DNA of 64,000 bases, from positions 248,001-312,000 of IMG/VR virus record IMGVR_UViG_3300035212_003113; one strand, 5' to 3'. The position numbers and the translations under genes were made by a program. A model generated the notes under the pieces. It worked only from the letters and a program-made list of their open reading frames with translations, was not told where the DNA came from and made no database searches. This document shows, in pieces, positions 3,809 to 63,121 of this stretch (positions are counted from its first letter, which is position 1; the number at the start of each line of letters is the position of its first letter).

Positions 3809-3814
3809 GGAAAA

Positions 3815-32749: not shown

Positions 32750-32849
32750 CATCTTGCAATAAATAAAAATCTACTCGAGATAATCGGTGTACCGATCAAT
32801 TAATGTTTTTTTAACAGGCTAGAGCTGAACCAGCACTTTGGGGTCTTTA

Positions 32850-43200: not shown

Positions 43201-44961
43201 GTTTTTCCGTTTATAACTCGCTCTTCTGGCAATGCTTCTGGCGCAGTAAGCTCGCCATTTCAGCTGAATGAGACTGCAGTAATTTCCGAGATGGAGCGTG
43301 TCTTCTCTCCTGGTACAGGCGGCAGCATTACATCTAGCTTTGTATTCGGTCCTGCATCAAGAGTGAAGACGATAGACCGAGTGGTTGCAAATAAGGAGAA
43401 TGAGAATGCAGACGTGCAGCAGCGCCTCACAGACGTCATTATCGCAATTCGCAGCTTAGCCGGAGAGTCGGTGAGCGATGTGCTTGTTAGCAAGGCAGAA
43501 ACAGAGGCAAAGGCAGCTCTCGCAAAGTTAAAGCTAGATAATATCCGCGGTCTTGTGGCTGCTAAACTTACCTCGATATCCGGCCATTTAAATGACCGGA
43601 GAACGCTACTCCGGTCTCTTTATGACACCATAAAGAGAGAGAGTGCTGGCGCTGTATCACCGCTTGAACAAGTAGGTGCCTCTGCGCTCGCAGCCATGGG
43701 AACTGACTTCCAGTCTGCTATTGGTATCTTCGGAAGCATGTCCGGCGCATCTTTGCCGCCAGTATTAGAGAATCTAGTTGAAAATGATTTAACAAATACA
43801 GATGGACCAGGAAGTGCAAAACGCTTTATCATAAATGATGCAGTGGTTATATCTGGTAGCTTTTCACATCGGCCTCCTGAGTACAATCAAGTATCAGTAA
43901 CAGGCGCCTTGGACTTTATATCTCCTGAAGCCAGCGGTACAATCGGTGAGCTACCTGCGCTCACTGCAGTTGCTACAGATTTCGACTCGTGGCGACAGTA
44001 CGGCTTTAGAGACAACTCTCCAATCCGTCGTCCAGATATGACTTCTGCGGAGACTCAGTGCGCGCCTTATGCTTCTCTAATGCTTGCAACTCAGCGCAAG
44101 AAGATTCACTCTGGCCGCATCACAGTCATTGGTAACGAGTATTATCGTCCAGGCGATAACGTATATCTTTCGTATCGCAATATGATTTATTATGTTACGA
44201 ACGTCAGCCACAATTTAAGCCTAAATGATGGTAGCTTTACTACTGAGCTTGATCTGGCTTATGGCAGACCTCCTGGCGAAATCATTCCGACGCCTCTTGA
44301 TATAATCGGTGCTGCGCCGAGCGGTGCTTCTTTCTTAACCAAAAAGTATCGTATGGCAAATTCTCAGGACCGCGCATCTACTCAGACTGCAAAAGGTCCG
44401 ACAATACTTAATCTAGGAACTTTTCACATTTCTCCGGCACTTAGACAAAGAGTTGGCACAACACGTCCTACAGAGCTGATGAGCACAATAGTTAAAGCCA
44501 ATGGATCAGAGCTAGATAATGTAGTGCTAAAGGCTCGAGCCCGCGTACTAGCATCTCCTACTCAGGCAGGAAAAAGTGCAAAGATAGAAGTAAGGGGATA
44601 TTATATCTCGGCAGAAGGTGATGTTCAAAAATCTGCCGTTGATACATGTTCCGGAATGATCTCCAGACTTATTGCCGAAAGGTTATCAGGTGGCGGAGCA
44701 CCTCCTGTTTCAAAAACAACAGACGATGGTTCACGATCCACGGGTCAAGCTCAGGCAACCAGTAGCCCCGGCGCGAACAGCCCGATTGCAGTCAGTCATA
44801 GGGTTATAGATATATCTGCTGATTTTAGCGATGAAGAGCGGTTGCAGATGCCATTCCCATCCGAAGATGCATGGCTTTCTGCTTCGCCAGTAAAGGTATC
44901 AGAGACCAAGACGATAGATTTGCCTGTAAATGCATTTGACATAGTCTTTGTTATAACCTAA
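40222..44961 (+). CDS. Baseplate hub (gp27/GpD-like) with very large insertions
   Basis: LEFFADPDGNLVLRPPRY; YNQVSVTG; YGFR; GRITVIGNEYYRPGDNVY..YYVTNVSHN..FTTELDL match hub signatures. Confidence 0.75.
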   Translation: MAILTGTARNRFAGFSESNAMGASDGTKGITDGVLGFFESLAQHADQFQPSFTEDGFYESPAIVAPGVRPTSEKIPSQRRHITQRPKATVFIKKKQFGSLASNNELRMLDEDEKLYLRCVKALFRRKCEEMAFHESLVNISSIYETSGFLLTDDLLDSSLDYVINVVGSLSGASDIISSIGSSSFLGSQMGFEDRFLSFMQGLYRAKQRSQRSRASAFTRWVDDPAEPDYAGLGPGTGTIELNMVSSLSSSCGLNDGSSSLEIEDPYQLMLITAADIENALYIATSRSYQISRFYDATASFRLAIAQNADRRLNFLRQKRGEKEISFEFVENDTGEMQPTATLGYVDAAKLKYYQWVGGILSADDKEEATGVGLNAEDIVLVNQIVSNLRQYRDATTIPPAQPGLNASESDLRRLSKLRDKMRRDFLGQHVIQPMDQITLFANSNTYDVTPVGGIVDVLSGASARLTDTLDPQLIEQERADILGSNSGTDPLSFANDLGLAALYNSIRKKNIFRDDGACIFSGLAEQISDRYDSSGGTFKVSVSCQSNLQYLQVSRYTFKPDLNNTLGAVNDPLTPFNLDAAVDPASGLIIADKFELSDKNKERLDFLRIASGPLVSKKLRGIDDILSDKRNGLAIISHTPGLAYKWKEGIISVALDAPGGGGNPGGISSLRQPFAKLDAANIASILITGQPYDYATFLEGVSKVSGTSSNPTNLARDFFNYLFEYTDRVKKYYGNFIPAKDRTLDKDSVMAYYQAKNALTALNTRANRLITKLNELSRQQKVGQGTSTDQQKLQDEIIRISSEISELQTKALPSGVQLSLEGNNAFLSVDAIDRVQADREILYKTKRKPEDVRFNKDKNYFIVSSDYDTEFIIQAFAASLGNFSMYDAEYSSPLETIRAAVSALQLEFFADPDGNLVLRPPRYNRTPLSLMLDMIRRMPPGQGSMLPAFVRNVLASRTNSLKDAIFKNELNIAKDLYSIGLSESEVSGNEGSVFPFITRSSGNASGAVSSPFQLNETAVISEMERVFSPGTGGSITSSFVFGPASRVKTIDRVVANKENENADVQQRLTDVIIAIRSLAGESVSDVLVSKAETEAKAALAKLKLDNIRGLVAAKLTSISGHLNDRRTLLRSLYDTIKRESAGAVSPLEQVGASALAAMGTDFQSAIGIFGSMSGASLPPVLENLVENDLTNTDGPGSAKRFIINDAVVISGSFSHRPPEYNQVSVTGALDFISPEASGTIGELPALTAVATDFDSWRQYGFRDNSPIRRPDMTSAETQCAPYASLMLATQRKKIHSGRITVIGNEYYRPGDNVYLSYRNMIYYVTNVSHNLSLNDGSFTTELDLAYGRPPGEIIPTPLDIIGAAPSGASFLTKKYRMANSQDRASTQTAKGPTILNLGTFHISPALRQRVGTTRPTELMSTIVKANGSELDNVVLKARARVLASPTQAGKSAKIEVRGYYISAEGDVQKSAVDTCSGMISRLIAERLSGGGAPPVSKTTDDGSRSTGQAQATSSPGANSPIAVSHRVIDISADFSDEERLQMPFPSEDAWLSASPVKVSETKTIDLPVNAFDIVFVIT

Positions 44962-50767: not shown

Positions 50768-51196
50768 ATGAGCTTTGACTTCAAACTTGCAAATGGTACT
50801 TTTTCGCTAGGCCCCGATGGAGACATCCAGCGCGCATATGGCCAGGAAAAGCTATCGCAGGACGTGGTCAAGATAATTGCCACTGCCGTAGGGACAAATC
50901 TGTTACATAAGTGGTATGGCTCATCAATACCGGATAATCTTGTAGGATCTGGCCTAAATCGGCAGTTCCTGGAGGCCGAGATCATCCGTAGTATCGGCTA
51001 TAGCCTGCAGAATCTCAAGGCCCTGCAGGAGCAGCAGGAGCGGGCTGGCCAAATATTGCTTCCAAGTGAGGCGATCAGGTCTGTCGAGGATATAAGTATC
51101 CTGCCAACTAATGATCCCCGAGCAATAGGAATTGTAATAGCAATTCGTACGCGATCAGGCAAAATTGCCCAAGAGACGCTCGCACTCCGGATTTAA
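50768..51196 (+). CDS. Baseplate wedge / sheath initiator (T4 gp25 / P2 W-like)
   Basis: 142 aa; KLSQDVVKII.T..G..H.WYGS..EI.RS..AIRSVEDISI pattern; located just before the J-like gene. Confidence 0.8.
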   Translation: MSFDFKLANGTFSLGPDGDIQRAYGQEKLSQDVVKIIATAVGTNLLHKWYGSSIPDNLVGSGLNRQFLEAEIIRSIGYSLQNLKALQEQQERAGQILLPSEAIRSVEDISILPTNDPRAIGIVIAIRTRSGKIAQETLALRI

Positions 51197-51205
51197 AGGT
51201 GAATC

Positions 51206-54200
51206 GTGGCCAGAATTAAGTCACTAGAAGAGATTGTGCTGTCAATGCTTGACTTCATCCGACTGGCACAGCCGGATGCAAACCTGAATCCCGGCAGCGT
51301 AATTCGCGATACCATGGTTGATATGCCTGCGACTGCCATTTCCCAGCTCTATGATGAGTTGCGAGCAGCATCAGGCTTTCAGGCCATACTTGCAGCGACC
51401 GGTTCTGAGCTCGACAAGATTGCAAGAAACTACAGCATCTCCCGCAACACTGGCAGCCCAGCCCGTGGCGTTGCTGTCCTTACTACAAACAATTTAGAAG
51501 CCAATATTTCGATACCAAATGGCACTTTTTTTATCTCGAGAAATGGCCAGAAGTTCCGCACCCTAAGTGACACCCTTATGGATGCCGCTAGGCCGAATAT
51601 CTATCGCTCTAATGCGGTCCGGCTGGCCAATGACCTGCAAATGATTGGCATTCTCGACCAGTTCGCCGTAGAGGTGAGCGTACAGGCCATTTCGCCAGGG
51701 GTTGCTGGTAGAATAAGCAAGTACCAGCTACTAAGCCATGGTATCCCCGGCATATCGAATATAACAAACATCTCTTCTTTCACCGGCGGCAGCAGTATAG
51801 AATCAGATGATCAGTTCCGAAACAGAATCTTGTCTATATTCCGCGGAGCAAATACCGGTACCGAGACCGCTTACCTTGGCGCCGTAAATGCCGACAATCG
51901 GGTTATCTCTAGCGCAGTAATAGGCCCAGGAAATCCACTCATGACTCGTGACGGGACCGTTACTGTCGAAGACGAGTACGGCAATATTACGATAATCAGC
52001 AGCGGTACCGGTGGCAAGGCAGATATACTTGTCCAGGGATCTGAGATCCTGCGTAATACAGAATCATTTATCTTCAATGACCGCTCTGGTACAGAGAACC
52101 CATCTGATCCGATAAACGATCAGGTCCTAGGTCTGCGTGGAGAGGACTCTGATTTAGACATGGCTCAGCGCCGTCGCAATGCCGTAGAATCTGGATCATT
52201 TCCGTATCAGCCAGTTGATTCAGTAGTAACGCTATCTGGCAGCCTTTCTGGAGCCAACTTTGTTCAGGCGTACATAGACGAGGCAGGAGTCGAGCGCGGC
52301 AACTTTAAACTAATCAAGGACGATGGCGCATTTCGTGGCAGTCCATTCGGCTTTGACAGGCTTCACTTTATATCTAACGAGATCGATCTTCAGAGTGAGC
52401 AGGTATCAAAGCCGCAGCTCGGCAGCAAAGATCCTCTTAACTTCACCGACGTAACTCACATCGACTCCATCTTCCAAAATATTTCAGTAGTACGAGAAGT
52501 TGCCACTACCGACCCAGTAAATCGTCAGTTTGTGACTGTGCGCCATACGCCTGTGCTTGCTGTTGACCGAGTAACTAACGCAACCACTGGTGAGCGCTAC
52601 CGCATAATCTCTCAGAACCCTGATGGCACTGGTACTCTCAATACAACCGGACGCATACAGATCGCCGGAGCAACCTTGCCACGCAGCACTGATATTATCG
52701 AAGTCAGTTATACTTGGCAGGCGCAGTTTGATAAATATGTCGATTACGATAATCTCATGGATGCTAATCGATCACGAACGGCAATAGATAGCGTTGACTG
52801 GGGTTATTCGGCACGCGTAGAGCTAGAGGAGACCGCCACTGTTTATTCTATAGCAGACGGTTATCATGTGCTGACCACGTATCCGATTAATCGTGTGACG
52901 AATGTCTACACCTATACTCGCGAGACAGTAAACCGCTCTGGCGGCAAGCTAATCCTTGCTGAGTCTATACTGGACATTCTATCTGTCCTGGATGCAGACG
53001 GCAGGGAAGTGTTCTTTACTGCTGCTGGGAATGGCAGTTTCTCCGGTTCTTCTATAACTCTCCCCACTGACTCGCTCCTACTAGAGGGAGAGCCGGCCAC
53101 GGTTACCTATAATACGACTGATGTCTTCAGCCCAGACAACGAGGATCTTGGTAGCTTTACCGGAAACAAGATACTGCTGTCAAGCGATATCGGCATCTCT
53201 ACTCCTGTTCTAGTAGACTATGTTGCTGCTCACCAGGAGTTGCTCCCGAATACTGCCCTATCCAGCCTGCCGGCATTTGGAGTAGAAAACGAATGGTCGG
53301 CTAACGGAATTATCTCTGGCGAACAGCCAACGCTATTTTCCTGGTCGGCCGGTCAGCGCACCGCTGTACAGGTGTTGGCTCCTACGCATCTGCGCATGCT
53401 AGTTAGCAATACCTCTTCTTCTGGCCGTCTGCTCATTCGCGGTCTTGCTTGGAAACGCATAGAGTCCACTTTTGTGAGCACCAACGAGGGACTGACACTA
53501 GATCTGTCCCAGGTTATCAGGCAGCAGCTCGGCACTCTGCCCACGGGTGCCTTCCTGGCCTCGGTCGACTCTCTTGAAAGCGTTGTTGTAGAGAATGGCG
53601 CAGCAACATCGGTAAATTTTCAGTATGATCTACAGAACTACGAGCTGCAGACCGCCATCTGGGATCGAGGTGCGATAGAGAATACATCTCTGCTGCCTAC
53701 CGCATTCTCCCTGCCAAGTACTTCTGCAAATGCAGCTGTCGAGCCCATAAGCGGCACTGGCCTGCGAGTATCTTTCTCTATAATTTACCCGATCATAGAG
53801 AGACTGACTGTTTCTGCCGCTGGCGAGCAGATAACCGAGAACAAGTTCGTGTTTGTCGAGGAGATCCGGATAGACTCTGGCTTTAGAAATCTCTCAAATG
53901 TTGTTGCTGGCAATATTACTATATCGGCACTTAATCAGCCATCAACAAATTCACAGTATTTTGTTAACTACTCGTACAAAGCTCCTAAAGAGGGCGAGCG
54001 CATAACCGTTGTCTACAACTATGATTCGCTAATGGCCGAGCTCACTGCAGCTGTCGAGACGGTACGTCCAATTGGCGGAGACATACTGGTTCGCAAGAAG
54101 GATTCGGTTGATCTTTATACGGAAGTAGAGGTCACTCCGCTACCAACATTCACTGGATCGACCTCAACCCTGCAGAGCACCGTCTCGCAGCGCATTACTG

Positions 54201-54403
54201 ACTTTATAAATGGACAGACAGCTGGCTCGACAATAGATGCTAGCGATATAATTAACGCAGTCTACGTAATAGCAGGTGTAGATCGCGTAATCATAAATAA
54301 ATTTAATACTGAGGATGTTGTTGCTATAAAGAAGAGCATAGTTGGCCGCGATGATAAATTCTTTGTCGCTCGCTCTGTTGTAGTAAATATCGTGAATAGG
54401 TGA
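51206..54403 (+). CDS. Baseplate J/gp6-like wedge protein with a large insertion
   Basis: NLNPGSVIRD..GSELDKIARNYSISR..A.G..EVSVQA..G..FTGGSSIESDDQFRNRI; C-terminal VRPIGGDILV..SDIINAVYVIAGVDRV. Confidence 0.88.
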   Translation: MARIKSLEEIVLSMLDFIRLAQPDANLNPGSVIRDTMVDMPATAISQLYDELRAASGFQAILAATGSELDKIARNYSISRNTGSPARGVAVLTTNNLEANISIPNGTFFISRNGQKFRTLSDTLMDAARPNIYRSNAVRLANDLQMIGILDQFAVEVSVQAISPGVAGRISKYQLLSHGIPGISNITNISSFTGGSSIESDDQFRNRILSIFRGANTGTETAYLGAVNADNRVISSAVIGPGNPLMTRDGTVTVEDEYGNITIISSGTGGKADILVQGSEILRNTESFIFNDRSGTENPSDPINDQVLGLRGEDSDLDMAQRRRNAVESGSFPYQPVDSVVTLSGSLSGANFVQAYIDEAGVERGNFKLIKDDGAFRGSPFGFDRLHFISNEIDLQSEQVSKPQLGSKDPLNFTDVTHIDSIFQNISVVREVATTDPVNRQFVTVRHTPVLAVDRVTNATTGERYRIISQNPDGTGTLNTTGRIQIAGATLPRSTDIIEVSYTWQAQFDKYVDYDNLMDANRSRTAIDSVDWGYSARVELEETATVYSIADGYHVLTTYPINRVTNVYTYTRETVNRSGGKLILAESILDILSVLDADGREVFFTAAGNGSFSGSSITLPTDSLLLEGEPATVTYNTTDVFSPDNEDLGSFTGNKILLSSDIGISTPVLVDYVAAHQELLPNTALSSLPAFGVENEWSANGIISGEQPTLFSWSAGQRTAVQVLAPTHLRMLVSNTSSSGRLLIRGLAWKRIESTFVSTNEGLTLDLSQVIRQQLGTLPTGAFLASVDSLESVVVENGAATSVNFQYDLQNYELQTAIWDRGAIENTSLLPTAFSLPSTSANAAVEPISGTGLRVSFSIIYPIIERLTVSAAGEQITENKFVFVEEIRIDSGFRNLSNVVAGNITISALNQPSTNSQYFVNYSYKAPKEGERITVVYNYDSLMAELTAAVETVRPIGGDILVRKKDSVDLYTEVEVTPLPTFTGSTSTLQSTVSQRITDFINGQTAGSTIDASDIINAVYVIAGVDRVIINKFNTEDVVAIKKSIVGRDDKFFVARSVVVNIVNR

Positions 54404-54407
54404 ACCG

Positions 54408-57400
54408 ATGTTTAGAGCAACGGAAATTTCTGTACGCGGCTATGATTCTATCCAGATCGCATTTAGCGACTTCCCGTCCGATGATATAACTCCGGATAAT
54501 TTTTCAATAGTCAGCAACTTCGCGAGTGAGGCGCCGCTACAGGTCCACTCTCTGCAGATTACCAAGAAGGTAATCACGCTGTATCATTCGCTCTCCTCTC
54601 CGCTGGTCAGCTACACCCTGATAATGCAGGACACTGCTTTTCGTTCGTTCGTTTCGCAGTCAGGAGAGCCGCTGCAGATCGACGGCAGCGCTAACAAATT
54701 TATTTTCATTGGGCCAGAGTCGCCAAACGGCATACGCGACAACATGCTCGATTATCTGACAAGCGTATACGATGGCTTCGAGAACAATCTGCTGCACAAG
54801 CATGTGTCTGGTCTGGCCGAGCAGCTGCTTTCGGCACGCACTGCAATAAGACAAAAATCCAACTCCGTTTACTTGGAAGAGGTGGTCCAGGATCAGCTCA
54901 TTTCACGCGGATCTCATAATTCTGATCGTCTGCCGGACGAAGGTGCATTCCAGGTAGATCGGGTCTCTGCAAGGGTCACAGGAGATGCGCTAACCTCGTC
55001 GAGCTTTTTATTTTCAAAAGCAACCGTGGATTCTTTCTCTGCATTTCCAGAGTACAACAACCCAACGCTGTCCTCTTTTCCCAGCATACCCTACTCTCTG
55101 CAGCAGGTGGTTGCGACAGAGATAGTTTCTAATTCTGAGAGAATAAGCAACAGCTTTTCTGGGCTAACGCTGAGCCTTTCAAAAGAGAATATTACGCAAG
55201 TCATCTCTGTTGTTCTACGTAGCGGTGGGACGAGCTATCCATACGACATCACTACGTATCCGATTGGATTACTTAGCAACCGGTATGATACTGCTTTCTC
55301 GTACAGCAACCTATCTCTGCAGAGCAATCAATTTCGCCTGGATCCGGCTGCTGTCCAGTCTGGTCACATTCCAGAGCCCGTGCCGAGCGACGAATGGTAC
55401 GTAACATACGCATATAAAGACCTTGGCAGATTGCCTGATTTTGCTTCAGTGGAAGTGTACGAAGTGAAGACGCAGGTTCGCGAACGAACGCCTGCTGTAT
55501 CCAATGTCTTTTCTCTTCAGAAGTTTCCAATTGTTTGGCCTGACGGTTCGCCAGCAGCCGCAGGAGCAGTAGAATTCTTGAATCCGCTAGCATCTGGTAG
55601 CGCACCAGCATTCGGCTCGACACATCCCGCATTCTTGGATGAAATCCCGTTTGACAGACTTTTGCCTCCAGCAAATCCAGGTGAATTCGCAGTAGATTAT
55701 ACAACTGGCCAGGTTCTTGTCTACGGTGAGGCCCTCGGTGGGCTAGGTACAGGTTCTTTTCCTCCTGTTGCAAGCTACTCATACCGCAGAACGTACTCTG
55801 GCGGTACTGATTATATCGTCGACCCGGAGTCAAGTGACATTGTTGCTGCCGTTGGCCGGGGTCTTGATGGTCGCCAGGTCTATCTTGACGTCAAGCATGA
55901 ACAGGTCTATGTACCAGGCGTAGATTATGTTGCCGAGACCCATAATGAAGCTCTGAATGAGTACATAGACAATCGACTTTTTGGAAATTCACGGATACAA
56001 ACGCTGTACGCCCCTATCACTGATGTGTTTCGCGTTTTTAACGAGACTACTGGTGAAACCTATAATGTAGACTACTACAGTCGCCATGAGATCAGCATAT
56101 CCGGCTCTCAGTTACCTCGTCGCCAGAATATCTATACAGAAGGTGCCCGCTTTAAGCAAGTGCTGCGCGAAGAGCTCTATATATCGTCAATTGCACGAGA
56201 TCTTGGTGCCGAGTGCGTATTTTCAGTGAGCCTCCAGAACTTTCCTGTGATGGCAGCCAGCCTTCCACAGATAGGCTCAGCGACAAATACTTCATTTGCC
56301 CCCGACTCTGCTCTGCTACTTGCAGAATACTATTTTGATGGTGATCTTCAGTCGCTTTCAGACAACCTTGATAAACTCCAATCTGTTGGTGATTACGTCG
56401 TAGACTACAGCGCTGGAATACTATACTTCCGAGCGCCAACTGACTCGGACTTTTTCGTAGGCACTGTTAACTATTTGTGCGGGGCAATTCAACCATCTAA
56501 TTCTCAGATAACCTCTGTAGACGTAATGCGCTATTCGGCCACCCCTACCAGTGAACCACTTCGCACAGTTGATCACAGTAGCTTCACTGCCACAGAAATA
56601 ATGCCTGCAGAGCTGCTGGCCTCATCTGAGCGCTTCCTCGGAGGCAATACCGGCAATCCGGTGTTATTCGGTACTCGTCAATGGGGGCGCCTTGCAAGTT
56701 GGCAGGTAGGCAGTGACATACTACATGTCGCAGATGCGCTTTTCACTGCAGATGTAGCAGATGGCAATCATTTTGTTCAGTTTGAAGATGAATCCCAGCG
56801 TCAGATTCTACAGTATATTGCACCGACCATTGTACGGGTAGATCTTCCGTTTACCGATAACGATGCAGACGTCGCATGGGTACTTCTGGACACGGATCTT
56901 GCTGACGGATACACTGTAGCAACAACCTATGAAGCACGAGATGTTCGGGGCGTATATCTACTTAGTGAGATAAACGACCCTCTGTCGCCGGTGCCAGTTT
57001 CAGTTGCAACAAATTACTGGGACAGATCTGTTGATCGAATCTCTGGAAATCAGCTCATATTTAATAATTCGCTTGCTAAGGCGCTGCCAGTCGGATCTGC
57101 GCTTGTTATCGATTACGACTTTGGCAACCTCTTTGTTGATTATGAATTTGTTATAGATAAACTACGTGTTGATTACGAGTGGGGAGATAATCAGATCCGC
57201 TGGCTGACCGCACTACCTGTTGGCACTGACTACTACTGCACCTATCGCTATGGTGCAATGCGCCGTGAACTGCTTGAAAATTTCGCAGTAATGCTTGGCC
57301 TGCCAGAGCTGCTAAATGCAGACCTAGATATGAACCGCGAGACTATTCGCGACTTGACTAGGGCTGCGATGACAGTCTTTGCCGGCGGACCAACGCTGCG

Positions 57401-58997
57401 ATCTATGCAGCAGATGGGACAGATTCCCACGCTTATAAAGCCTACCATAAACGAGCTCACCTTTGGTGAGTGGACGCTTGGGCGAGATAATTTGTTTCCT
57501 GCGCCACCTGCTGTTGTTGGCACCACTGCATTCGGTCCTGGTCGATGGGGCTCTGGTCTTGATACTAGCTCTTGCCACATAGAGATGCCTGCTGAAAAGA
57601 TAATCAGTCATCGCAACGGTTCCTTTTTCTGCAAAATTCGACCACTGTGGGCCGGTATAAATAACAACTCCCCGTTTACCATGGATGTGGACGTTCCAGC
57701 GGACGAGATTTGGATTGGCGCTGCTGGTTTTCATCCTGATGCGGTTCCTTTTAATCTTGATCTTGATCAGGTCCAGAATGTATCGGGTCGTCCATACCAG
57801 CTGGGCTCTCGTCGCGGTTTATTTGTTTGGTTTGATCCTGATGAGAAGCGCTGGCAGGTCACATTCTGTGGCACAAGCGGAGAGACCGCAGTTGGGATAA
57901 TAGAGTCGGCCGGCAAAGCAGTATACGTTCAGGATGGATATGTAAACGCATATCTTGACACTGAGATTACTGACACCAGGACTTCCTCCGGGTCTATCAT
58001 TGAATTCTCGTTTTTGATCGATTCTGAGGATACTGGCGGCACAGAGCTTGCTAGCGAATACACTGATGAGACAGGTGCTGTTGTAGTGGACCCTATCTAT
58101 ACAGATTCACTTGTATTTGTCTCATCTGCTCCTAACTACATATTTGATACAGGTACCGAAAGACGCTCCAGGATCTCACTTTATCGGGATGAATGGGGCT
58201 ACCTTACTCTCTGTGCGATTGACGCCAGCGGACGTCGCCACTGGCGAGTTAGCGCCGATATACGGTCATGGGAGCCTGGCGACGTACACAGTGTGGGCGC
58301 GTCGTGGATGATGAACAGTCCCGAGGGCAGGGATGAGATGCACCTATTTATAGATGGACAAGAAGTACCAAATATCTATAGATTTAACAGCCCATTTGTA
58401 CCTGGCAGTCTTTTCAGGTCTGTTGCCGTGGAGCAAATGGCCGCAGCAACCCGGCCGGTAATTGCGATAGCCGATGGTATAACGGTCGATGGCTCTGATA
58501 CGGTATCTTCTGCTGGCACCGACTTCTCAGTACTCGGTATTTTACCAGGCGATACGCTAACTATTCTGGAAGATACAAATGATGGGCTAGGGAGTCCTTA
58601 TACCATTCTGGCTGTTTCTGGTGGCGAGCTAGTGCTCGACTCACCTATGACGCTGAGTCTGTCTTCGGTAAAATTTTCATTAAATTCGCAATCTTACGTG
58701 GTTACTGCTAGTAATGAATCGGGGTTTTCTGTTGCTGTTGGCGGTACGGAGTTAGTTGGGCCGACTGGGGACGAACCGCAGTACTCCATTACCCGCTCCG
58801 GCGGTAACTATATATTGACGGTTTACGATGGGCTGCAGATAGGCGATTTCATTGAAGTTCGTACTCTTGGACTATCCGTGTCCCGGGCACTTTCGATTGC
58901 CATGGTTCCTGGCGAGGGCGGAGTGCCTGCTTCCTATATACTGACAGAAGATGGCGATATACTGATCACAGAGTCGGGTGATCTAATCACATTGTAG
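54408..58997 (+). CDS. Large baseplate wedge protein (gp7/P2 I-like core) with Ig-like and LamG-like domains
   Basis: LLENFAVMLG..RETIR..GPTLRSM pattern; GSFFCKIRPLW and VHSVGASW..MHLFIDGQEV LamG-like strands; follows the J-like gene. Confidence 0.6.
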   Translation: MFRATEISVRGYDSIQIAFSDFPSDDITPDNFSIVSNFASEAPLQVHSLQITKKVITLYHSLSSPLVSYTLIMQDTAFRSFVSQSGEPLQIDGSANKFIFIGPESPNGIRDNMLDYLTSVYDGFENNLLHKHVSGLAEQLLSARTAIRQKSNSVYLEEVVQDQLISRGSHNSDRLPDEGAFQVDRVSARVTGDALTSSSFLFSKATVDSFSAFPEYNNPTLSSFPSIPYSLQQVVATEIVSNSERISNSFSGLTLSLSKENITQVISVVLRSGGTSYPYDITTYPIGLLSNRYDTAFSYSNLSLQSNQFRLDPAAVQSGHIPEPVPSDEWYVTYAYKDLGRLPDFASVEVYEVKTQVRERTPAVSNVFSLQKFPIVWPDGSPAAAGAVEFLNPLASGSAPAFGSTHPAFLDEIPFDRLLPPANPGEFAVDYTTGQVLVYGEALGGLGTGSFPPVASYSYRRTYSGGTDYIVDPESSDIVAAVGRGLDGRQVYLDVKHEQVYVPGVDYVAETHNEALNEYIDNRLFGNSRIQTLYAPITDVFRVFNETTGETYNVDYYSRHEISISGSQLPRRQNIYTEGARFKQVLREELYISSIARDLGAECVFSVSLQNFPVMAASLPQIGSATNTSFAPDSALLLAEYYFDGDLQSLSDNLDKLQSVGDYVVDYSAGILYFRAPTDSDFFVGTVNYLCGAIQPSNSQITSVDVMRYSATPTSEPLRTVDHSSFTATEIMPAELLASSERFLGGNTGNPVLFGTRQWGRLASWQVGSDILHVADALFTADVADGNHFVQFEDESQRQILQYIAPTIVRVDLPFTDNDADVAWVLLDTDLADGYTVATTYEARDVRGVYLLSEINDPLSPVPVSVATNYWDRSVDRISGNQLIFNNSLAKALPVGSALVIDYDFGNLFVDYEFVIDKLRVDYEWGDNQIRWLTALPVGTDYYCTYRYGAMRRELLENFAVMLGLPELLNADLDMNRETIRDLTRAAMTVFAGGPTLRSMQQMGQIPTLIKPTINELTFGEWTLGRDNLFPAPPAVVGTTAFGPGRWGSGLDTSSCHIEMPAEKIISHRNGSFFCKIRPLWAGINNNSPFTMDVDVPADEIWIGAAGFHPDAVPFNLDLDQVQNVSGRPYQLGSRRGLFVWFDPDEKRWQVTFCGTSGETAVGIIESAGKAVYVQDGYVNAYLDTEITDTRTSSGSIIEFSFLIDSEDTGGTELASEYTDETGAVVVDPIYTDSLVFVSSAPNYIFDTGTERRSRISLYRDEWGYLTLCAIDASGRRHWRVSADIRSWEPGDVHSVGASWMMNSPEGRDEMHLFIDGQEVPNIYRFNSPFVPGSLFRSVAVEQMAAATRPVIAIADGITVDGSDTVSSAGTDFSVLGILPGDTLTILEDTNDGLGSPYTILAVSGGELVLDSPMTLSLSSVKFSLNSQSYVVTASNESGFSVAVGGTELVGPTGDEPQYSITRSGGNYILTVYDGLQIGDFIEVRTLGLSVSRALSIAMVPGEGGVPASYILTEDGDILITESGDLITL

Positions 58998-59026
58998 TTG
59001 CATTATCAATACTTGTTTGAGGGTTT

Positions 59027-59671
59027 ATGGCAAATAAGCGCATTAGTGAGCTAGATCTATCGGGTGGGCTTGCATCTGACGACTTGCTTGTAGTGGTTGA
59101 TACCGGTACTGGCGAGACTCAAAAGGCGAGCCTTTCGCAAGCTCTGGACTATATTGCAGATAATCTTTCTACGGGCGATGTTACTGGTACGGGTAATGCG
59201 GGCAATGTGGCATTATGGACTGGTGCGTCCACTTTGTCATACGATGCTAATTTATACTGGGATGGCGCGAATGATCGACTAGGCATGGGTACGGCGATGC
59301 CTGCTACAGCACTTGACGTCGTTGGTACAATCACGGCATCGGCTGGAGTTGTATCTCCAATTCAGACTAATGCACAGTCAGCTTCTTACGTACTGGCTCT
59401 ATCCGATGCATCTAAAATTGTTGAAGTTGCTGTGTCCTCGCCATCTACTGCTACGATAACAGTTCCTCTAGACAGCAGCGTTGCCTTTCCAATCGGTACA
59501 CAAATAATTGTATCACAAACTGGTACAGGTGCTGTTGACATTGCTGGTGAAGTAGGCGTTACAATTGATTATCGCAGTGGACTGGGGCTAGATCTTAATG
59601 GTCAGTGGGCTGCCGCTACACTGATTAAGCGCGCAGCTGACACCTGGATGCTGTTTGGTGATCTAGTATGA
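59027..59671 (+). CDS. Short fibre/adaptor protein
   Basis: MANKRISEL..DDLLVVVD..ETQK N-terminus; C-terminal NAQSASYVLALSD..TITVP..VAFPIGTQI..GQWAAATLIKRAADTWMLFGDL domain common in phage fibres. Confidence 0.7.
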   Translation: MANKRISELDLSGGLASDDLLVVVDTGTGETQKASLSQALDYIADNLSTGDVTGTGNAGNVALWTGASTLSYDANLYWDGANDRLGMGTAMPATALDVVGTITASAGVVSPIQTNAQSASYVLALSDASKIVEVAVSSPSTATITVPLDSSVAFPIGTQIIVSQTGTGAVDIAGEVGVTIDYRSGLGLDLNGQWAAATLIKRAADTWMLFGDLV

Positions 59672-60078
59672 TCACGCCTGCTGTTTTAGGAACCATTGCA
59701 GTAAGGCGCGCAATCTTCTCAGGTACTCCATTGGAGTCATTTGAGTACGCTGGCGTCTGGCCGGGAACTCTCAGTGACCCTGCATATCCCGATACCTTTA
59801 CTGGCTTCTTGTCGCCTTCCAACGCGACGCCACTGGAGTCGTTTGAGTACGCGGGCAACTGGCCTGGGACAATCTCCGACCCTGCATATCCCTCAACGTT
59901 CACCGGCTTCGCCACGCCGTCAGACACGACGCCGTTAGAATCATTTGAGTATGTGGGCGGCTGGCCGGGAGCTCTCAACGACCCTGCGTATCCCGATACC
60001 TTTACTGGTTTCTTGTCGCCGTCAGATGCGACACCGCTGGAGTCTTTTGAGGCCGCAGGGAGCTGGCCGGGGACCTGA
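59668..60078 (+). CDS. Small tandem-repeat protein (34-aa units)
   Basis: ATGA overlap with the upstream gene; three complete and one partial TPLESFEYxGxWPGxxxDPAYPxTFTGFxxPSxx units. Confidence 0.75.
   Translation: MITPAVLGTIAVRRAIFSGTPLESFEYAGVWPGTLSDPAYPDTFTGFLSPSNATPLESFEYAGNWPGTISDPAYPSTFTGFATPSDTTPLESFEYVGGWPGALNDPAYPDTFTGFLSPSDATPLESFEAAGSWPGT
59725..60075 (+). repeat. Tandem coding repeat with a 102-nt period
   Basis: Units start at 59725, 59827, 59929 and 60031; differences are mostly synonymous. Confidence 0.92.
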
Positions 60079-60122
60079 TATCAACTGATGTACGGAATAC
60101 GCAGACGTACTAGGAGGCTACG

Positions 60123-60800
60123 ATGTCTTTTGCAGATTGGACTTTTGTAACAAACGGGCTTGCCAGTAACGCGGAGCCTTATGCTCCGAGCGGTGTGATA
60201 CCTGCGCCTAGCATCGCGTCAGGTTCGTATGCCCGAATCATAAACGGAGATGGAAGCTCGTCGTCTTACGCTGGTTTCGTGCCATCGAACGCATCATTTA
60301 CCGGCGTTCCGGCGACGAAGGCGATTCGTATTCAAGCGTTCATCCGCTTGAACGGGAGCGTCGGGCAGTTTCTTATGGCTGCAAAATACACCCCGGCTGG
60401 TTTCAATAGTATTAGCGGCTACGCGCTAGGCACAAACAGATCATCTGCCCCTTCTTTGTTTTTTAGAACCCCTGGCAGCCAGACAACATTGATAAACAGC
60501 ATTTCTATCGATGTTTGGTACAGCTTCCGCATGACGGTGTATCCCATTTCTCCGACGGTAGACCGCATAATCTGCGAGCAAGAGTCTTCTCCGGGGAGCG
60601 GTGTATGGTCATCAACATTCGCAGACGGCAATGGAGATATCACCATTGACCAAAGCATTACTCCTTCGCAGTACGTCGCATGGGGAGGATCGACGAACAA
60701 TGGTGTATTTGGCGCAGGCGGCTACCTCGGTAGCCCCGGAAACACCATCATTGATATGATGCAAGTGTCGTTGGCAACAGTGCCTGTGCCAATTCCGTGA
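60123..60800 (+). CDS. Concanavalin/lectin-like beta-sandwich protein
   Basis: GGAGG SD; AIRIQAFIRL..WYSFRMTVY..IIDMMQVS strand pattern typical of jelly-roll lectin domains. Confidence 0.55.
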   Translation: MSFADWTFVTNGLASNAEPYAPSGVIPAPSIASGSYARIINGDGSSSSYAGFVPSNASFTGVPATKAIRIQAFIRLNGSVGQFLMAAKYTPAGFNSISGYALGTNRSSAPSLFFRTPGSQTTLINSISIDVWYSFRMTVYPISPTVDRIICEQESSPGSGVWSSTFADGNGDITIDQSITPSQYVAWGGSTNNGVFGAGGYLGSPGNTIIDMMQVSLATVPVPIP

Positions 60801-61159
60801 TACTCTGATGAGTATGTTGTCCGGCCCTGGCTACAGCCTGCTTGCTATCTAGCCAAGGGAGCTGTTATTGAGTATGGGTCACTTGTTCGCCCAAAGTGCG
60901 CTTACTCTCCCAGATCGACATCGGCATATAGCTCGGTACCGAGTGCAGCTCCAAATAGTGATTTTTATTTCTAGTGGGCTGCCTACCTGAGATCTTTACC
61001 AGTTTTTGACTAAACTTTATTACTAGGCCAATGGCCTTGTAATGGCCTAATAGGCCATGCAAATGTAATAATAAACAGACAACTCATGAGAGCATGCTGC
61101 CACTAGTCATGCAAGCAAATACTTGGTTATTACTCGAATCGGAATAACCAGAGGTAGAC

Positions 61160-63121
61160 GTGATAGGACCTAATCAATTAGCTATTCGAGCCGCGCCGCC
61201 TATTGACCTGCAGTCAATAGACTGTTATCGCGTTATTCTTGAGAAGAAAGCAGTATTCTCAGGCACTTCATTTGATTTTGGAACAGGCTCCTTTTCAGGC
61301 TCCGGGCCAATTTTTGGAACATTCGCGGCACTGCCTCAGCCATCAAACAGCATAAATGGCAAAAAACTAGTAATTACTCTGGATGGCACAAATCTGGGTA
61401 TCGGCAGTCATACGGTTACTATAACCGGAACCTCATATAGCTCGGCAACCACAGAGACGATCACCTTTGCCTCATCCGGTGTACAGCAGACTGTCGAATT
61501 CTGGAAAACAATTGATTCAATAGATATTTCGGTAGAAGTAGACGATCCAGTGTATCCAGCTGCCGCCATTCAGATTGTCGAGGCAGTACCGCTCACCCAG
61601 TCTGAAAATGATGGGATTAATGCCGAAGTCTATTCCTATGATAACGGCGTCATTACGTTCCGCATTGCAGGTACAGATAACGACTTTATACTTTCCTCTG
61701 GATATTATCTTCTTGACTATCCATCGCCTATTTCTATTCAGATGGCTGACAAAGGCCGTCTTATTATAGGCGCAGATGTCTCCGGCGTATATCGCGGTGA
61801 GGCAATTATCGAGGCACCATCTTTTTATTCTTCGACTCTAGAAGATGTGCGCATAGGCGAGAGCAGTGATATCCTTAATCAAACCCTGCTTCATAATTCT
61901 CCATTCCCTCCGGCTAAGATGCCAGAGGCGACCCTGCTCCTCGATTTTGATGAGCACGTAAAGGATATAACAGGAATCTATCCAGCATTCCTCAGTCAAT
62001 TCAAAACCGCATCCAGATCCCTGAACTCTGCCTTTGAAGATGCACTTTATGTTGATCGCAGGATCGTACTGGATAATGCTAGAGAGCTAGTAGGTCCGCG
62101 GCGTGGTACAATAGAATTTTTTCTATCGCCGCTTTTAGATACATACTATGATGAGAACGAATACAGATTCATCATGGATATTACGTCTCTTAAAAGCATT
62201 GATACCGTTAGCACAACCTCTAATACCATTATACTGCCATTTAAAGCCAGAAGCGTAAACCGCGTATACCTAAAAGGCGATGACACGCGAGAAAATCTTC
62301 TTGGACCGCGTAGTCTGCTTTCCGATGGACGTACCATTCGTCTGCCAAGCAGGCTGCCTGCTCAAAGAACAGCTGTTACCGTAGAATACACGCCAATAGA
62401 CTTCGAGGGTGATCGCATATCGCTTTATCTCGACGGCTACAACAATGTTAATTTTGCTATAACGGCCAACAATATTACTCGGGTGATCTCTAGAGAGATC
62501 GACTGGAAGCGAGACAGCTGGCATCGTATAATGGCCACTTGGGATGTTTCAAACATAGACAACTTCGACCAGATGCGGCTATTCCTTGATGGCACAGAAA
62601 ATAACATAGTTACGTGGGGCAGTCCCGGCTTTATCTGGGGGGGCGGACATGTATGGGGAACATCTGCCACAGGTGTAACCGGCAGCCAGGCCTTAATTGA
62701 CGATATAAACCTAGTTGACGAGTTCAGTGTAATAAATATTGGCTCTGATTTTTCTGGCTCGCAGCAATATTTGATGAAAATGGATAACTTAAGATTTAGC
62801 TCTATTGCTCGCCAGCCTGTGCGCATTGGTGCGCTTGATTATGACTTAGTATGGAATGACAACCTAGGTGCAGTATCTCCTGTTATACCCGATGCTTTTA
62901 CAAAAGGTTTATTTGACTTCAATCGATCTGACTCTGAGAGCGACCGCTTGGCAAATCTTATCAGCACAGAGGGCTCGCTGTATTCAATCGGCGTAGAGAT
63001 TGATGACGGATTTAACAAAATACTTTCGTCTGAGCGCAGTCGAGAGGCCCTGCTAAGCATCTATCAAAAAATAAAGCCGGCACATATGCGCCTGTTCTCA
63101 AAGTTTAAGCAAGAGATCTGA
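61160..63121 (+). CDS. Baseplate-region protein with LamG-like domains
   Basis: GAGG SD with GTG start; GTIEFFLSP..RISLYLD..SWHRIMATW..MRLFLDG..MDNLRFSS LamG pattern; ends KIKPAHMRL as in wedge-type proteins. Confidence 0.6.
   Translation: MIGPNQLAIRAAPPIDLQSIDCYRVILEKKAVFSGTSFDFGTGSFSGSGPIFGTFAALPQPSNSINGKKLVITLDGTNLGIGSHTVTITGTSYSSATTETITFASSGVQQTVEFWKTIDSIDISVEVDDPVYPAAAIQIVEAVPLTQSENDGINAEVYSYDNGVITFRIAGTDNDFILSSGYYLLDYPSPISIQMADKGRLIIGADVSGVYRGEAIIEAPSFYSSTLEDVRIGESSDILNQTLLHNSPFPPAKMPEATLLLDFDEHVKDITGIYPAFLSQFKTASRSLNSAFEDALYVDRRIVLDNARELVGPRRGTIEFFLSPLLDTYYDENEYRFIMDITSLKSIDTVSTTSNTIILPFKARSVNRVYLKGDDTRENLLGPRSLLSDGRTIRLPSRLPAQRTAVTVEYTPIDFEGDRISLYLDGYNNVNFAITANNITRVISREIDWKRDSWHRIMATWDVSNIDNFDQMRLFLDGTENNIVTWGSPGFIWGGGHVWGTSATGVTGSQALIDDINLVDEFSVINIGSDFSGSQQYLMKMDNLRFSSIARQPVRIGALDYDLVWNDNLGAVSPVIPDAFTKGLFDFNRSDSESDRLANLISTEGSLYSIGVEIDDGFNKILSSERSREALLSIYQKIKPAHMRLFSKFKQEI

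What the first reader, a model, noticed from the sequence alone, without database searches (positions are those of the whole stretch)
59027..60800. Three-gene cassette: adaptor, four-repeat 'ESFE..W' linker and lectin-like domain (possible multivalent strand complementation)
Seen: the adaptor ends ..WMLFGDL and is coupled (ATGA) to a protein with a short hydrophobic head (MITPAVLGTIA) and four TPLESFE.(A/V)G.WPG motifs at 34-aa spacing on Pro-rich spacers; the last copy stops right after the motif. The next gene is a jelly-roll-like domain starting abruptly at MSFADW. Established: many ConA-like and cleaved-adhesin domains begin with an 'E[SD]FE..G..P..W' strand. Inference: each repeat donates that first strand to one copy of the lectin protein, making a beads-on-a-string adhesin whose valency is set by repeat number. 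I know of no description of this in phages.
Basis: partly seen in the sequence, partly recalled or inferred. Interest (0 to 1): 0.65.

Follow-up and report, generated by a model that had tools for sequence, protein, structure and literature searches.

The report
Phage fibre connector: peptide array plus lectin
A giant phage's tail-fibre region holds a small protein ending in four copies of an 'ESFE..W' peptide, followed by a lectin-fold protein with a fixed N-terminus; this gene pair recurs in many uncultured phages and is sometimes fused, so it is probably an undescribed way of joining fibre parts.

Summary
ORF1 (59027-59671), ORF2 (59668-60078, four ESFE..W motifs 34 aa apart, ending right after the fourth) and ORF3 (60123-60800) are as described. 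ORF3 folds confidently as a ConA-like sandwich.

New findings:
- ORF2 and ORF3 form a conserved gene pair. Every relative whose upstream DNA I could read has an ESFE..W array ending at or just after the W. The next gene then starts M-A-x-x-D-W/F at residue 1.
- The ORF3 family has 189 representative clusters, none in Pfam, PHROGs, NCBIfam, PDB or cultured phages.
- Five representatives (six sequences) are natural fusions of a head and one motif to the lectin.
- In one relative the array is the C-terminal tail of a 4495-aa adhesin-like protein.

- ORF3's fold looks complete without a donated strand.
- The last motif is consistently a different type from the internal ones.
- Fusions carry only one motif.
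- The fused motif is not modelled as packed in cis.
- The complex prediction gave no verdict.

My best reading is a peptide-domain docking pair that joins fibre parts. The truncated last unit meets ORF3's N-terminal strand. The internal units act as a stalk or as extra docking sites. ORF1 is an ordinary short tail-fibre protein and not a conserved partner. Valency set by repeat number remains possible at about 0.2.

The parts
59027..59671 (+). ORF1, 214 aa: short tail-fibre / minor-tail protein. Neighbour and possibly the local anchor for ORF2, but not a conserved member of the module.
   Evidence: ORF. Residues 97-213 match the extreme C-terminus of PHROG tail families (phrog_8780, E 6e-19). 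Residues 90-213 are about 45% identical to Gordonia phage minor tail proteins. Upstream genes differ in relatives.
59668..59671 (+). ATGA overlap: ORF1 stop and ORF2 start (translational coupling).
   Evidence: Sequence. A similar 1-nt overlap occurs in L002 and a 4-nt overlap in L012.
59668..60078 (+). ORF2, 136 aa: head plus ESFE..W array (connector / docking-peptide protein).
   Evidence: Homologues P0018-P0025, P0032 and P0033 have 2-3 motifs and the same ending. The ESM Atlas model of ORF2 alone has pLDDT 0.43.
59668..59727 (+). ORF2 head, aa 1-20 (MITPAVLGTIA..): variable N-terminal anchor segment.
   Evidence: At least three short head types, plus one long 55-aa head, occur among homologues.
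59728..59829 (+). Internal unit 1 (aa 21-54), internal-type motif ESFEY..W.GT followed by D..YP.TF.GF.
59830..59931 (+). Internal unit 2 (aa 55-88).
59932..60033 (+). Internal unit 3 (aa 89-122).
60034..60075 (+). Truncated terminal unit (aa 123-136, PLESFEAAGSWPGT). Terminal-type motif at the extreme C-terminus and the proposed docking element for ORF3.
   Evidence: The terminal type (no aromatic residue after F-E, ending 0-5 residues after the W) is seen in all 16 arrays examined. The same type is present in the natural fusions.
60112..60117 (+). AGGAGG ribosome-binding site of ORF3, 5 nt before the ATG.
   Evidence: Comparable sites (AGGAG, AAGGAG) precede the lectin gene in L003, L006, L008, L010, L012 and L014.
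60123..60800 (+). ORF3, 225 aa: complete ConA-like beta-sandwich of an undescribed family.
   Evidence: AlphaFold2 pLDDT 89.2. VIA Z 15.3 to 2a5z, and 12-14.7 to CBM66, ERGIC-53, PL7 lyases, legume lectins and two mycobacteriophage baseplate / receptor-binding domains. No Pfam, PHROG, NCBIfam or PDB sequence match. 189 representative clusters.
60123..60146 (+). N-terminal signature of ORF3 (MSFADWTF), the family hallmark M-A/S-x-x-D-W/F-x-F/I at residues 1-8. Proposed partner strand of the terminal motif.
   Evidence: D5 and W6 are invariant in A1 and A2. 135 of 165 family sequences have M-x3-[DN]-[WFY] at residues 1-6. It forms strand 6-10 in the model.

Best explanation
ORF2 and ORF3 are the two halves of a fibre-joining module in the baseplate / tail-fibre region of a 372-kb jumbo myovirus.

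Partner A, here the small ORF2, is anchored by a variable N-terminal head. It ends in an array of ESFE..W units whose last unit is cut off at the extreme C-terminus. Partner B, here ORF3, is translated separately from the next gene. It is a complete ConA-like sandwich whose strictly N-terminal M-A-x-x-D-W/F strand is the family hallmark.

I propose that the truncated last unit of A and the N-terminal strand or adjacent face of B bind each other by peptide-domain docking, most simply beta-strand augmentation. This hangs the lectin-fold protein on the end of A. The three complete internal 34-aa units, rich in conserved aromatics and each under purifying selection, would form a self-contained stalk that sets reach. 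Less likely, they are further docking sites. ORF3 itself would be the distal glycan-binding tip. In relatives the same domain carries cadherin, LamG, RCC1 or Ig modules behind it.

Shown: the anatomy, the fold, the conserved gene pairing, the fusions, and the internal / terminal motif dichotomy. Inferred: physical binding, which surfaces touch, virion location, and glycan binding.
For: (1) Conserved adjacency and order in every relative with readable upstream sequence:
- L002, L003, L006/7, L008/9, L010 (two successive divergent pairs), L012/13, L015 and L017.
- L004, where the array protein carries an extra domain.
- L014, where the array is the C-terminal tail of a 4495-aa LamG/PA14/GLEYA protein, and the next gene encodes an ORF3-like domain plus cadherins plus LamG.
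 The pairing persists where lectin identity to ORF3 has fallen to about 25%.

(2) Rosetta-stone fusions of a head and one motif to the lectin occur in five representative clusters. One of them was seen as two 87%-identical sequences from different samples.

(3) Both elements are pinned to chain termini. The array ends 0-5 residues after the last W in 16 of 16 arrays, or runs straight into a fused domain in P0020 and P0026. The lectin signature sits at residues 1-6 in 135 of 165 members.

(4) Terminal and internal motifs are distinct types: 0 of 16 against 23 of 25 have an aromatic residue after F-E. Fusions carry the terminal type.

(5) The copies are under purifying selection, with pN/pS 0.14-0.32 and pS near saturation.

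(6) ORF3 is a complete ConA-like fold. Structural neighbours include phage baseplate / receptor-binding domains 8zdo_a and 9n6a.

(7) Location: the cassette lies directly after the gp25-like and gp6/J-like baseplate genes and a 1529-aa protein.

(8) In long relatives the ORF3-like domain is N-terminal to adhesin modules. That is the position of attachment domains in phage fibres (the positional rule is my own knowledge).
Against: No direct evidence of binding was obtained. In the natural fusion P0058, AlphaFold2 does not place the motif on the domain (residues 1-21 are below pLDDT 50). ORF2 alone is predicted disordered, so a folded 'bead' stalk is unsupported. In some relatives the pair or fusion sits beside dUTPase, PurA, RuvC or primase genes and not in a clear structural block, so virion membership is not certain. 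L003 and L015 have two motifs and two lectin genes, which fits multivalency better than tip-only docking. No relative exists in cultured phages, so no proteomic or structural data are available.
Confidence: 0.55

Rival explanations
1. One reading: multivalent scaffold. Every ESFE..W unit binds one copy of ORF3, donating a strand or docking as a peptide. ORF2 would then display four lectins, with valency set by repeat number, a scaffoldin-like string of beads.
For: Internal motifs are at least as conserved as the terminal one across very divergent loci, and each copy is under purifying selection. L003 and L015 have two motifs followed by two lectin genes. The lectin gene always has a strong ribosome-binding site while ORF2's is weak or coupled, which is compatible with an excess of lectin. 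The motif-lectin link itself is well supported.
Against: Internal and terminal motifs are systematically different types, and all fusions carry a single terminal-type motif. ORF3's fold is complete and does not need a donated first strand. Motif number (2-5) is mostly paired with one lectin gene. In L014 each internal unit is followed in cis by a short ..D-W..V segment resembling the next protein's N-terminus, which suggests the internal units are self-satisfied.
Confidence: 0.2
2. Split-domain relic or obligate heterodimer with no fibre role. The pair is one ancestral protein (head, ESFE, lectin) split by gene fission. ORF2 then serves only as a folding or assembly helper for ORF3, or the two act in a non-virion function such as cell-surface modification during infection.
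For: Compact fusions exist in which the lectin's own D-F/W takes the place of the motif's W (P0061, P0076, P0089). Some loci lie among nucleotide-metabolism or replication genes. ORF2 alone is predicted disordered.
Against: The array also ends a 4495-aa adhesin-like protein, and the partner domain heads cadherin/LamG proteins. That fits structural joining and not chaperoning. In the window the cassette lies inside the baseplate / fibre block. The multiplication and conservation of internal units are unexplained by a simple fission.
Confidence: 0.15
3. ORF2 and ORF3 are made as one polypeptide by programmed readthrough, frameshift or ribosome bypass across the short gap. The apparent two-gene structure would then be an artefact of ORF calling.
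For: In L002, L003, L006 and L008 the two ORFs are in the same frame, separated by one stop and 3-42 nt. Both sides keep a W codon near the junction.
Against: In the window, L010 and L004 the frames differ. Gaps range from 3 to 69 nt with no conserved sequence. L006 has two consecutive stops. The initiator Met and a strong ribosome-binding site are conserved before every lectin gene, and M1 is invariant in the family.
Confidence: 0.03

Closest known systems
Branched receptor-binding-protein systems of Klebsiella / E. coli podophages (KP32, K11, KP34): branching domain of RBP1 plus conserved docking peptide of RBP2 (PMC13352976)
   Same: A short conserved peptide on one fibre protein and a domain on another form the specific pair that builds a multi-part receptor-binding apparatus. 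The two genes are adjacent, and the modules are exchangeable between proteins.
   Different: In those phages the peptide is at the N-terminus of the secondary RBP and the receiving domain sits inside the primary RBP. Here the peptide is at the C-terminus of the upstream protein and is repeated 2-5 times. The receiving candidate is an N-terminal ConA-like domain of the downstream protein. There is no sequence relation. Binding is shown experimentally there and only inferred here.
Donor-strand complementation / exchange in chaperone-usher pili (my own knowledge)
   Same: A terminal peptide of one subunit is proposed to pair as a beta-strand with the next subunit, giving head-to-tail assembly. 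The elements are pinned to chain termini.
   Different: Pilins have an incomplete Ig fold that cannot fold without the donated strand. ORF3 models as a complete 14-strand ConA-like sandwich alone. No chaperone or usher is present. Strand pairing here is a hypothesis.
Cohesin-dockerin scaffoldins of cellulosomes (my own knowledge)
   Same: Repeated docking elements on one chain could set the number of attached subunits.
   Different: Cohesins are folded domains of about 150 aa, and dockerins are Ca-binding modules on the cargo. Here the repeated element is a 12-14-aa motif within a 29-58-aa unit, and occupancy of the internal copies is unproven and doubtful.
ConA-like lectin/glucanase superfamily: SO2946-like (2a5z), CBM66, ERGIC-53 / legume lectins, PL7 lyases, and mycobacteriophage baseplate and receptor-binding domains (8zdo_a, 9n6a)
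   Same: ORF3 has the same fold over essentially its whole length, with Z 12-15, rmsd about 3 A and 160-183 aligned residues.
   Different: Sequence identity is 5-12%. No Pfam, NCBIfam, PHROG or PDB sequence match was found. No family stands out above the others, so no sugar specificity or catalytic function can be transferred.

Membership tests
ConA-like lectin/glucanase fold (ORF3) | Two-sheet beta-sandwich jelly roll of about 200 residues that superposes on solved members | tested here: met
   AlphaFold2 pLDDT 89.2, 14 strands. VIA Z 15.3 to 2a5z and 12-14.7 to many ConA-like domains, covering model residues 1-221. Foldseek probability 1.00.
Curated ConA-like sequence families (Pfam Laminin_G_3, Cleaved_Adhesin and others; NCBIfam choice-of-anchor types) | Match to the family HMM above its cut-off | tested here: not met
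   ORF3 has no Pfam family at E up to 1 and no meaningful NCBIfam hit. A family profile finds no PDB sequence. ORF3 is therefore a member of the fold but not of any described family.
Lectin in the functional sense (ORF3) | Carbohydrate-binding site, or metal site as in legume lectins | not testable with these tools
   No close structural relative stands out and model coordinates are not inspectable here. The conserved R38, K88, Y100, R136 and D147 are candidates for binding either sugar or peptide.
Donor-strand complementation systems | Acceptor subunit has an incomplete fold with a missing strand and an open groove | tested here: not met
   ORF3 is predicted complete and confident on its own, and it aligns end to end with complete domains. 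A prediction cannot exclude an extra edge strand being added.
Donor-strand complementation systems | Donor peptide pairs as a strand with the acceptor | tested here: inconclusive
   The cis-fused motif in P0058 is modelled below pLDDT 50. No usable trans prediction was obtained.
Branched RBP docking pairs (KP32 type) | T4 gp10-like branching domain in RBP1 and an N-terminal conserved peptide in RBP2 | tested here: not met
   No such domain was found in ORF1-3 by Pfam or PHROG. The polarity is reversed: a C-terminal peptide array and an N-terminal receiving domain. This is an analogy of principle only (PMC13352976).
New two-gene module 'ESFE..W array + MAxxDW ConA-like protein' (defined here) | Array whose last, truncated unit ends the upstream protein, with the next gene starting M-A/S-x-x-D-W/F and homologous to ORF3 | tested here: met
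   The window meets all three features. So do 10 further distinct loci.
Phage tail-fibre / minor-tail tip domain (ORF1) | HMM match of the C-terminal domain, ending at the profile end | tested here: met
   phrog_8780 at 642-755 of 755 with E 6e-19, plus phrog_18179, 21510 and 21978. About 45% identity to Gordonia phage minor tail proteins.

The most novel reading that the evidence does not exclude
The ESFE..W array is a genuine multivalent scaffold. Each unit, internal ones included, captures one ConA-like protein by adding a strand next to its N-terminal strand. Repeat number (1 in the fusions, 2-5 in arrays) would then tune how many lectin heads, or whole cadherin/LamG adhesins, a phage fibre displays. 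That would make it a phage counterpart of cellulosome scaffoldins, built from a 12-residue motif.
Probability: 0.2. Interest if true: 0.8.

Novelty: new variant of a known kind. Interest (0 to 1): 0.6.

Why it matters
Phage host range is set by how receptor-binding parts are hung on the tail. Only a few docking principles are known: anchor domains, gp10-like branching domains with a conserved peptide, and adaptor proteins.

This pair would add another. It is a short C-terminal peptide unit, often repeated, recognised by an N-terminal ConA-like domain. It is found in at least 189 sequence clusters of uncultured phages and is absent from every curated family library I searched. The same two elements join very different cargo: a bare lectin, cadherin-LamG adhesins, RCC1 or Ig modules, and a 4495-aa giant.

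If binding is confirmed, the pair gives a rule for annotating fibre connectivity in jumbo-phage genomes, where most tail proteins are otherwise unannotatable. It would also be a compact, natural plug-and-socket pair for studying fibre assembly. The varying repeat number gives a direct handle on whether phages tune fibre length or valency by repeat expansion.

Tried and rejected
- Complex prediction of ORF3 (with alignment A1) plus ORF2 residues 103-136 scored ipSAE 0.02 against a mark of 0.32. The controls were not run and the tool's verdict was 'no answer' (after two busy refusals). I use this neither for nor against binding.
- DNA and protein searches of cultured phages with the region, ORF2, ORF3, P0184 and P0097 found no match.
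- IMG/VR and JGI metagenome scans with ORF3 or A1 found nothing. A scan with A4 gave L017, which was useful, and L018, an unrelated 626-aa protein sharing only a short SPGSGIW stretch, which I rejected.
- Readthrough, frameshift or bypass joining ORF2 to ORF3 is rejected, because frames and gaps vary and the ribosome-binding site and Met are conserved.
- A second ESFE..P.GW in the genome (G000 85418) is internal to an unrelated 213-aa ORF and is a chance match.
- The extra C-terminal domain of P0026 is not related to ORF3 (hhalign probability 0.1) and has no Pfam hit.
- The weak DUF6330 hit of ORF2 (E 0.026, below the cut-off) led nowhere, and no paper mentions it.
- The ORF1 PDB sequence search gave only noise. 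ORF1 against the L002 upstream fragment showed no BLAST similarity despite a similar-looking ending.
- The ESM Atlas look-alikes of ORF2 scored below 0.8 and are uninformative.
- The promoter / terminator scan of 58900-61250 found nothing above shuffled expectation.
I also recall it from memory, but it remains a lead only.
- I did not use the reads tools or another genetic code. The botulinum-toxin binding-domain hits are generic fold matches only.
Full report
**Setting.** The window is bases 248001-312000 of a 371,675-bp virus record with direct terminal repeats, rated complete. All large ORFs lie on the + strand. PHROG matches identify the following:
- tail-fibre proteins near the start of the window;
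- a tail sheath at 32838-35411;
- a gp25-like baseplate protein at 50768-51196;
- a gp6/J-like wedge protein at 51206-54403.

The wedge protein's best cultured relative is Bacillus phage G gp188, at 30% identity over a quarter of the protein. The finding therefore lies in the baseplate / fibre block of a distant jumbo myovirus, just after a 1529-aa protein. It is followed by a 359-nt non-coding gap and more large proteins that have no family match.

**The observation.** The three ORFs, the ATGA overlap, the four motifs at exact 34-aa spacing, the stop three codons after the last W, and the MSFADW start behind an AGGAGG site are all present.
- Tandem Repeats Finder sees one array: period 102, 3.4 copies, 73% matches.
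- Between copies, synonymous sites are close to saturated (pS 0.48-0.87) while replacement changes are few (pN 0.06-0.18). The copies are therefore old duplications, each kept by selection in the + frame.
- The strict motif occurs nowhere else in the genome.

**ORF1.** Its last 120 or so residues match the extreme C-terminus of several PHROG tail families. They are about 45% identical to the tips of Gordonia phage minor tail proteins. ORF1 is a short tail-fibre protein. The gene upstream of the array in relatives can be any of the following:
- a protein with a comparable-looking tip (L002);
- a LamG protein (L003);
- a RuvC-like nuclease (L006);
- a gene in a lysis region (L008);
- a 318-aa unknown (L012).

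ORF1 is therefore not a conserved member of the module.

**ORF3.** With 17 homologues as the alignment, AlphaFold2 gives pLDDT 89.2 and pTM 0.88, with 14 strands starting at residues 6-10.
- Foldseek and the Foldseek-independent aligner both place it in the ConA-like lectin/glucanase fold. The best match is Z 15.3 to SO2946 (2a5z). Matches at Z 12-14.7 include CBM66, ERGIC-53, PL7 lyases, the Aap lectin, legume lectins and two mycobacteriophage baseplate or receptor-binding domains.
- Model residues 1-221 are covered by these alignments.
- No family stands out from the rest, and identity is 5-12%.
- Pfam, PHROGs, NCBIfam and a profile search of PDB sequences all return nothing.

'Lectin-like jelly roll' is therefore correct at the fold level. 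The fold appears complete without any donated strand.

**The family and its N-terminus.**
- The word search found 17 standalone homologues of 219-232 aa.
- A profile search of 1.84 billion representatives found 189 clusters at E up to 0.001, of which 97 are at 1e-10 or better.
- Almost all are proteins of 215-270 aa whose first residue aligns with profile position 1.
- 135 of 165 sequences start M-x3-[D/N]-[W/F/Y]. Ala is at position 2 in 104 of them and Asp at position 5 in 132.
- Eight members are longer than 300 aa. Of the seven I scanned, five carry known modules after the N-terminal domain: four cadherin repeats plus LamG, cadherins plus PKD, RCC1 repeats, or an Ig-like domain.
- None of the three family queries I tried matches a cultured phage.

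**The pair.** ORF2 homologues have two or three motifs and end at or just after the last W. The arrangement 'array, short gap, lectin gene' appeared wherever I could read the DNA upstream of a family member:

| Locus | Arrangement |
|---|---|
| L002 | three motifs |
| L003 | two motifs, then two lectin paralogues |
| L006/L007 | three motifs |
| L008/L009 | two motifs |
| L010 | two successive, mutually divergent pairs |
| L012/L013 | long 55-aa head, two motifs |
| L015 | at least two motifs, then two lectin-like genes |
| L017 | two motifs |

Three further cases extend the picture.
- In L004 the array protein continues after its last motif into an unrelated domain of about 260 aa, and the lectin gene still follows.
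- In L014 the array is the C-terminal tail of a 4495-aa protein with LamG, PA14, GLEYA and Ig hits. It has four units of about 58 aa plus a truncated last motif. Twenty nucleotides later the 933-aa lectin-cadherin-LamG protein begins.

**Fusions.** Five representatives carry an N-terminal extension. It consists of a head like those of the array proteins, plus one motif, joined directly to the lectin.
- In P0058 and its 87%-identical relative P0178, which has four member sequences on two contigs, the complete terminal motif ..GWPGT runs straight into M-T-D-F.
- Their nearest unfused relatives start M-A-F-T-D-F.
- In P0061, P0076 and P0089 the lectin's own D-F sits where the motif's W would be.

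The motif and the lectin N-terminus are neighbours in a single chain in some lineages.

- ORF3 does not look like a fold lacking its first strand.
- The motifs are of two kinds. In short-unit arrays the residue after F-E is Tyr or Phe in 23 of 25 internal motifs (Leu in the other two) and in none of 16 terminal motifs. Internal motifs continue W-x-G-T..D..Y-P-x-T-F-x-G-F, whereas terminal ones stop. Fusions have one motif of the terminal kind.
- In the long units of L014, each internal motif is followed 8-9 residues later by a ..D-W..V segment resembling the next protein's N-terminus. In P0058 the spacing W-P-G-T-x-x-D equals that of the window's internal units. This suggests internal units are completed in cis and only the last one needs a partner in trans. 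I rate this as a lead and not a result.
- AlphaFold2 of the fusion P0058 (56-sequence alignment) models the domain well, at pLDDT 87.4. It leaves residues 1-21 below 50, so it gives no picture of the contact.
- Repeat number does not track lectin gene number. However, L003 and L015 (two motifs, two lectins) keep multivalency alive.

**Alternatives considered.**
- One polypeptide by recoding is unlikely. Frames and gap lengths (3-69 nt) vary, L006 has two stops, and every lectin gene keeps its own Met and ribosome-binding site.
- A non-structural role cannot be excluded. In L017 and on the P0058 contig the genes lie beside dUTPase-type and PurA-type genes, and in L006, L010 and L012 they lie next to RuvC, primase and SbcCD-like genes. 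The giant adhesin-like partner in L014 and the window's own position argue for a fibre role.

**Comparison with known systems.** The closest principle is the branching-domain / conserved-peptide pair that builds dual-RBP podophages, shown experimentally for KP32, K11 and KP34 (PMC13352976). Polarity, folds and sequences all differ here, and the peptide is repeated. Donor-strand complementation of pili and cohesin-dockerin scaffoldins are analogies for the two possible modes. The defining 'incomplete acceptor fold' of the former is not met.

**Verdict.**
- The functional link between array and lectin-fold protein is strongly supported by synteny and fusions.
- The specific claim of one lectin per repeat by first-strand donation is unproven and, on balance, less likely than tip docking with a repeat stalk.
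- The module is undescribed in the curated libraries and paper searches available here. I rate it a new variant of peptide-domain docking in phage fibres, with interest 0.6.

Noticed in passing
window 60801-61159: A 359-nt non-coding gap after ORF3, the longest nearby. It holds GGCC-centred palindromes (61019-61058) and AT-rich inverted repeats. No consensus terminator or promoter was found, so it may mark a transcription-unit boundary or a regulatory site.
   Followed up: partly
window 3815-8149, 20176-24840, 24837-31007, 40222-44961, 54408-58997: Five ORFs of 1444-2056 aa in the tail module. They have no PHROG match, or only a marginal one. Pfam was run only on 54408-58997 and found nothing. 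They are giant structural proteins of unknown role.
   Followed up: partly
window 59625-59978 (- strand): A 117-aa antisense ORF that mirrors the ORF2 repeat. It is most likely a by-product of the repeat, because selection (pN/pS) and homologue conservation support the + frame.
   Followed up: partly
L014:1-2980 and 3001-5802: A 4495-aa protein (LamG, PA14, GLEYA, Ig hits) ends in four 58-aa ESFE-type units plus a truncated one. It is followed by a 933-aa protein with an ORF3-like domain, four cadherin repeats and LamG. This is the most elaborate form of the module.
   Followed up: partly
L010:1045-2145: A second, strongly diverged array / lectin pair (84 aa and 273 aa) lies directly after the first pair in the same contig. 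This is a tandem duplication of the whole two-gene module.
   Followed up: partly
L010:3360-4910 and L012:6873-8501: The SbcD-like (Metallophos) gene of these related phages carries an intein-splicing domain hit.
   Followed up: no
L017:691-2710 and the contig of P0058: In these relatives the pair or fusion sits right after adenylosuccinate-synthase-like and dUTPase/dCTP-deaminase genes, and before PMM and Dam genes. That is not an obvious structural block and is a caveat for the virion role.
   Followed up: no
L011:1122-1763 (G000 85121-85762): The only other ESFE..P.GW in the genome is internal to an unrelated 213-aa ORF with a hydrophobic tail. It is a chance match.
   Followed up: yes
window 59027-59100: ORF1 begins MANKRISELD.., an N-terminal pattern I recall from many phage fibre proteins. 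It may be the virion-attachment end. This was not tested.
   Followed up: no
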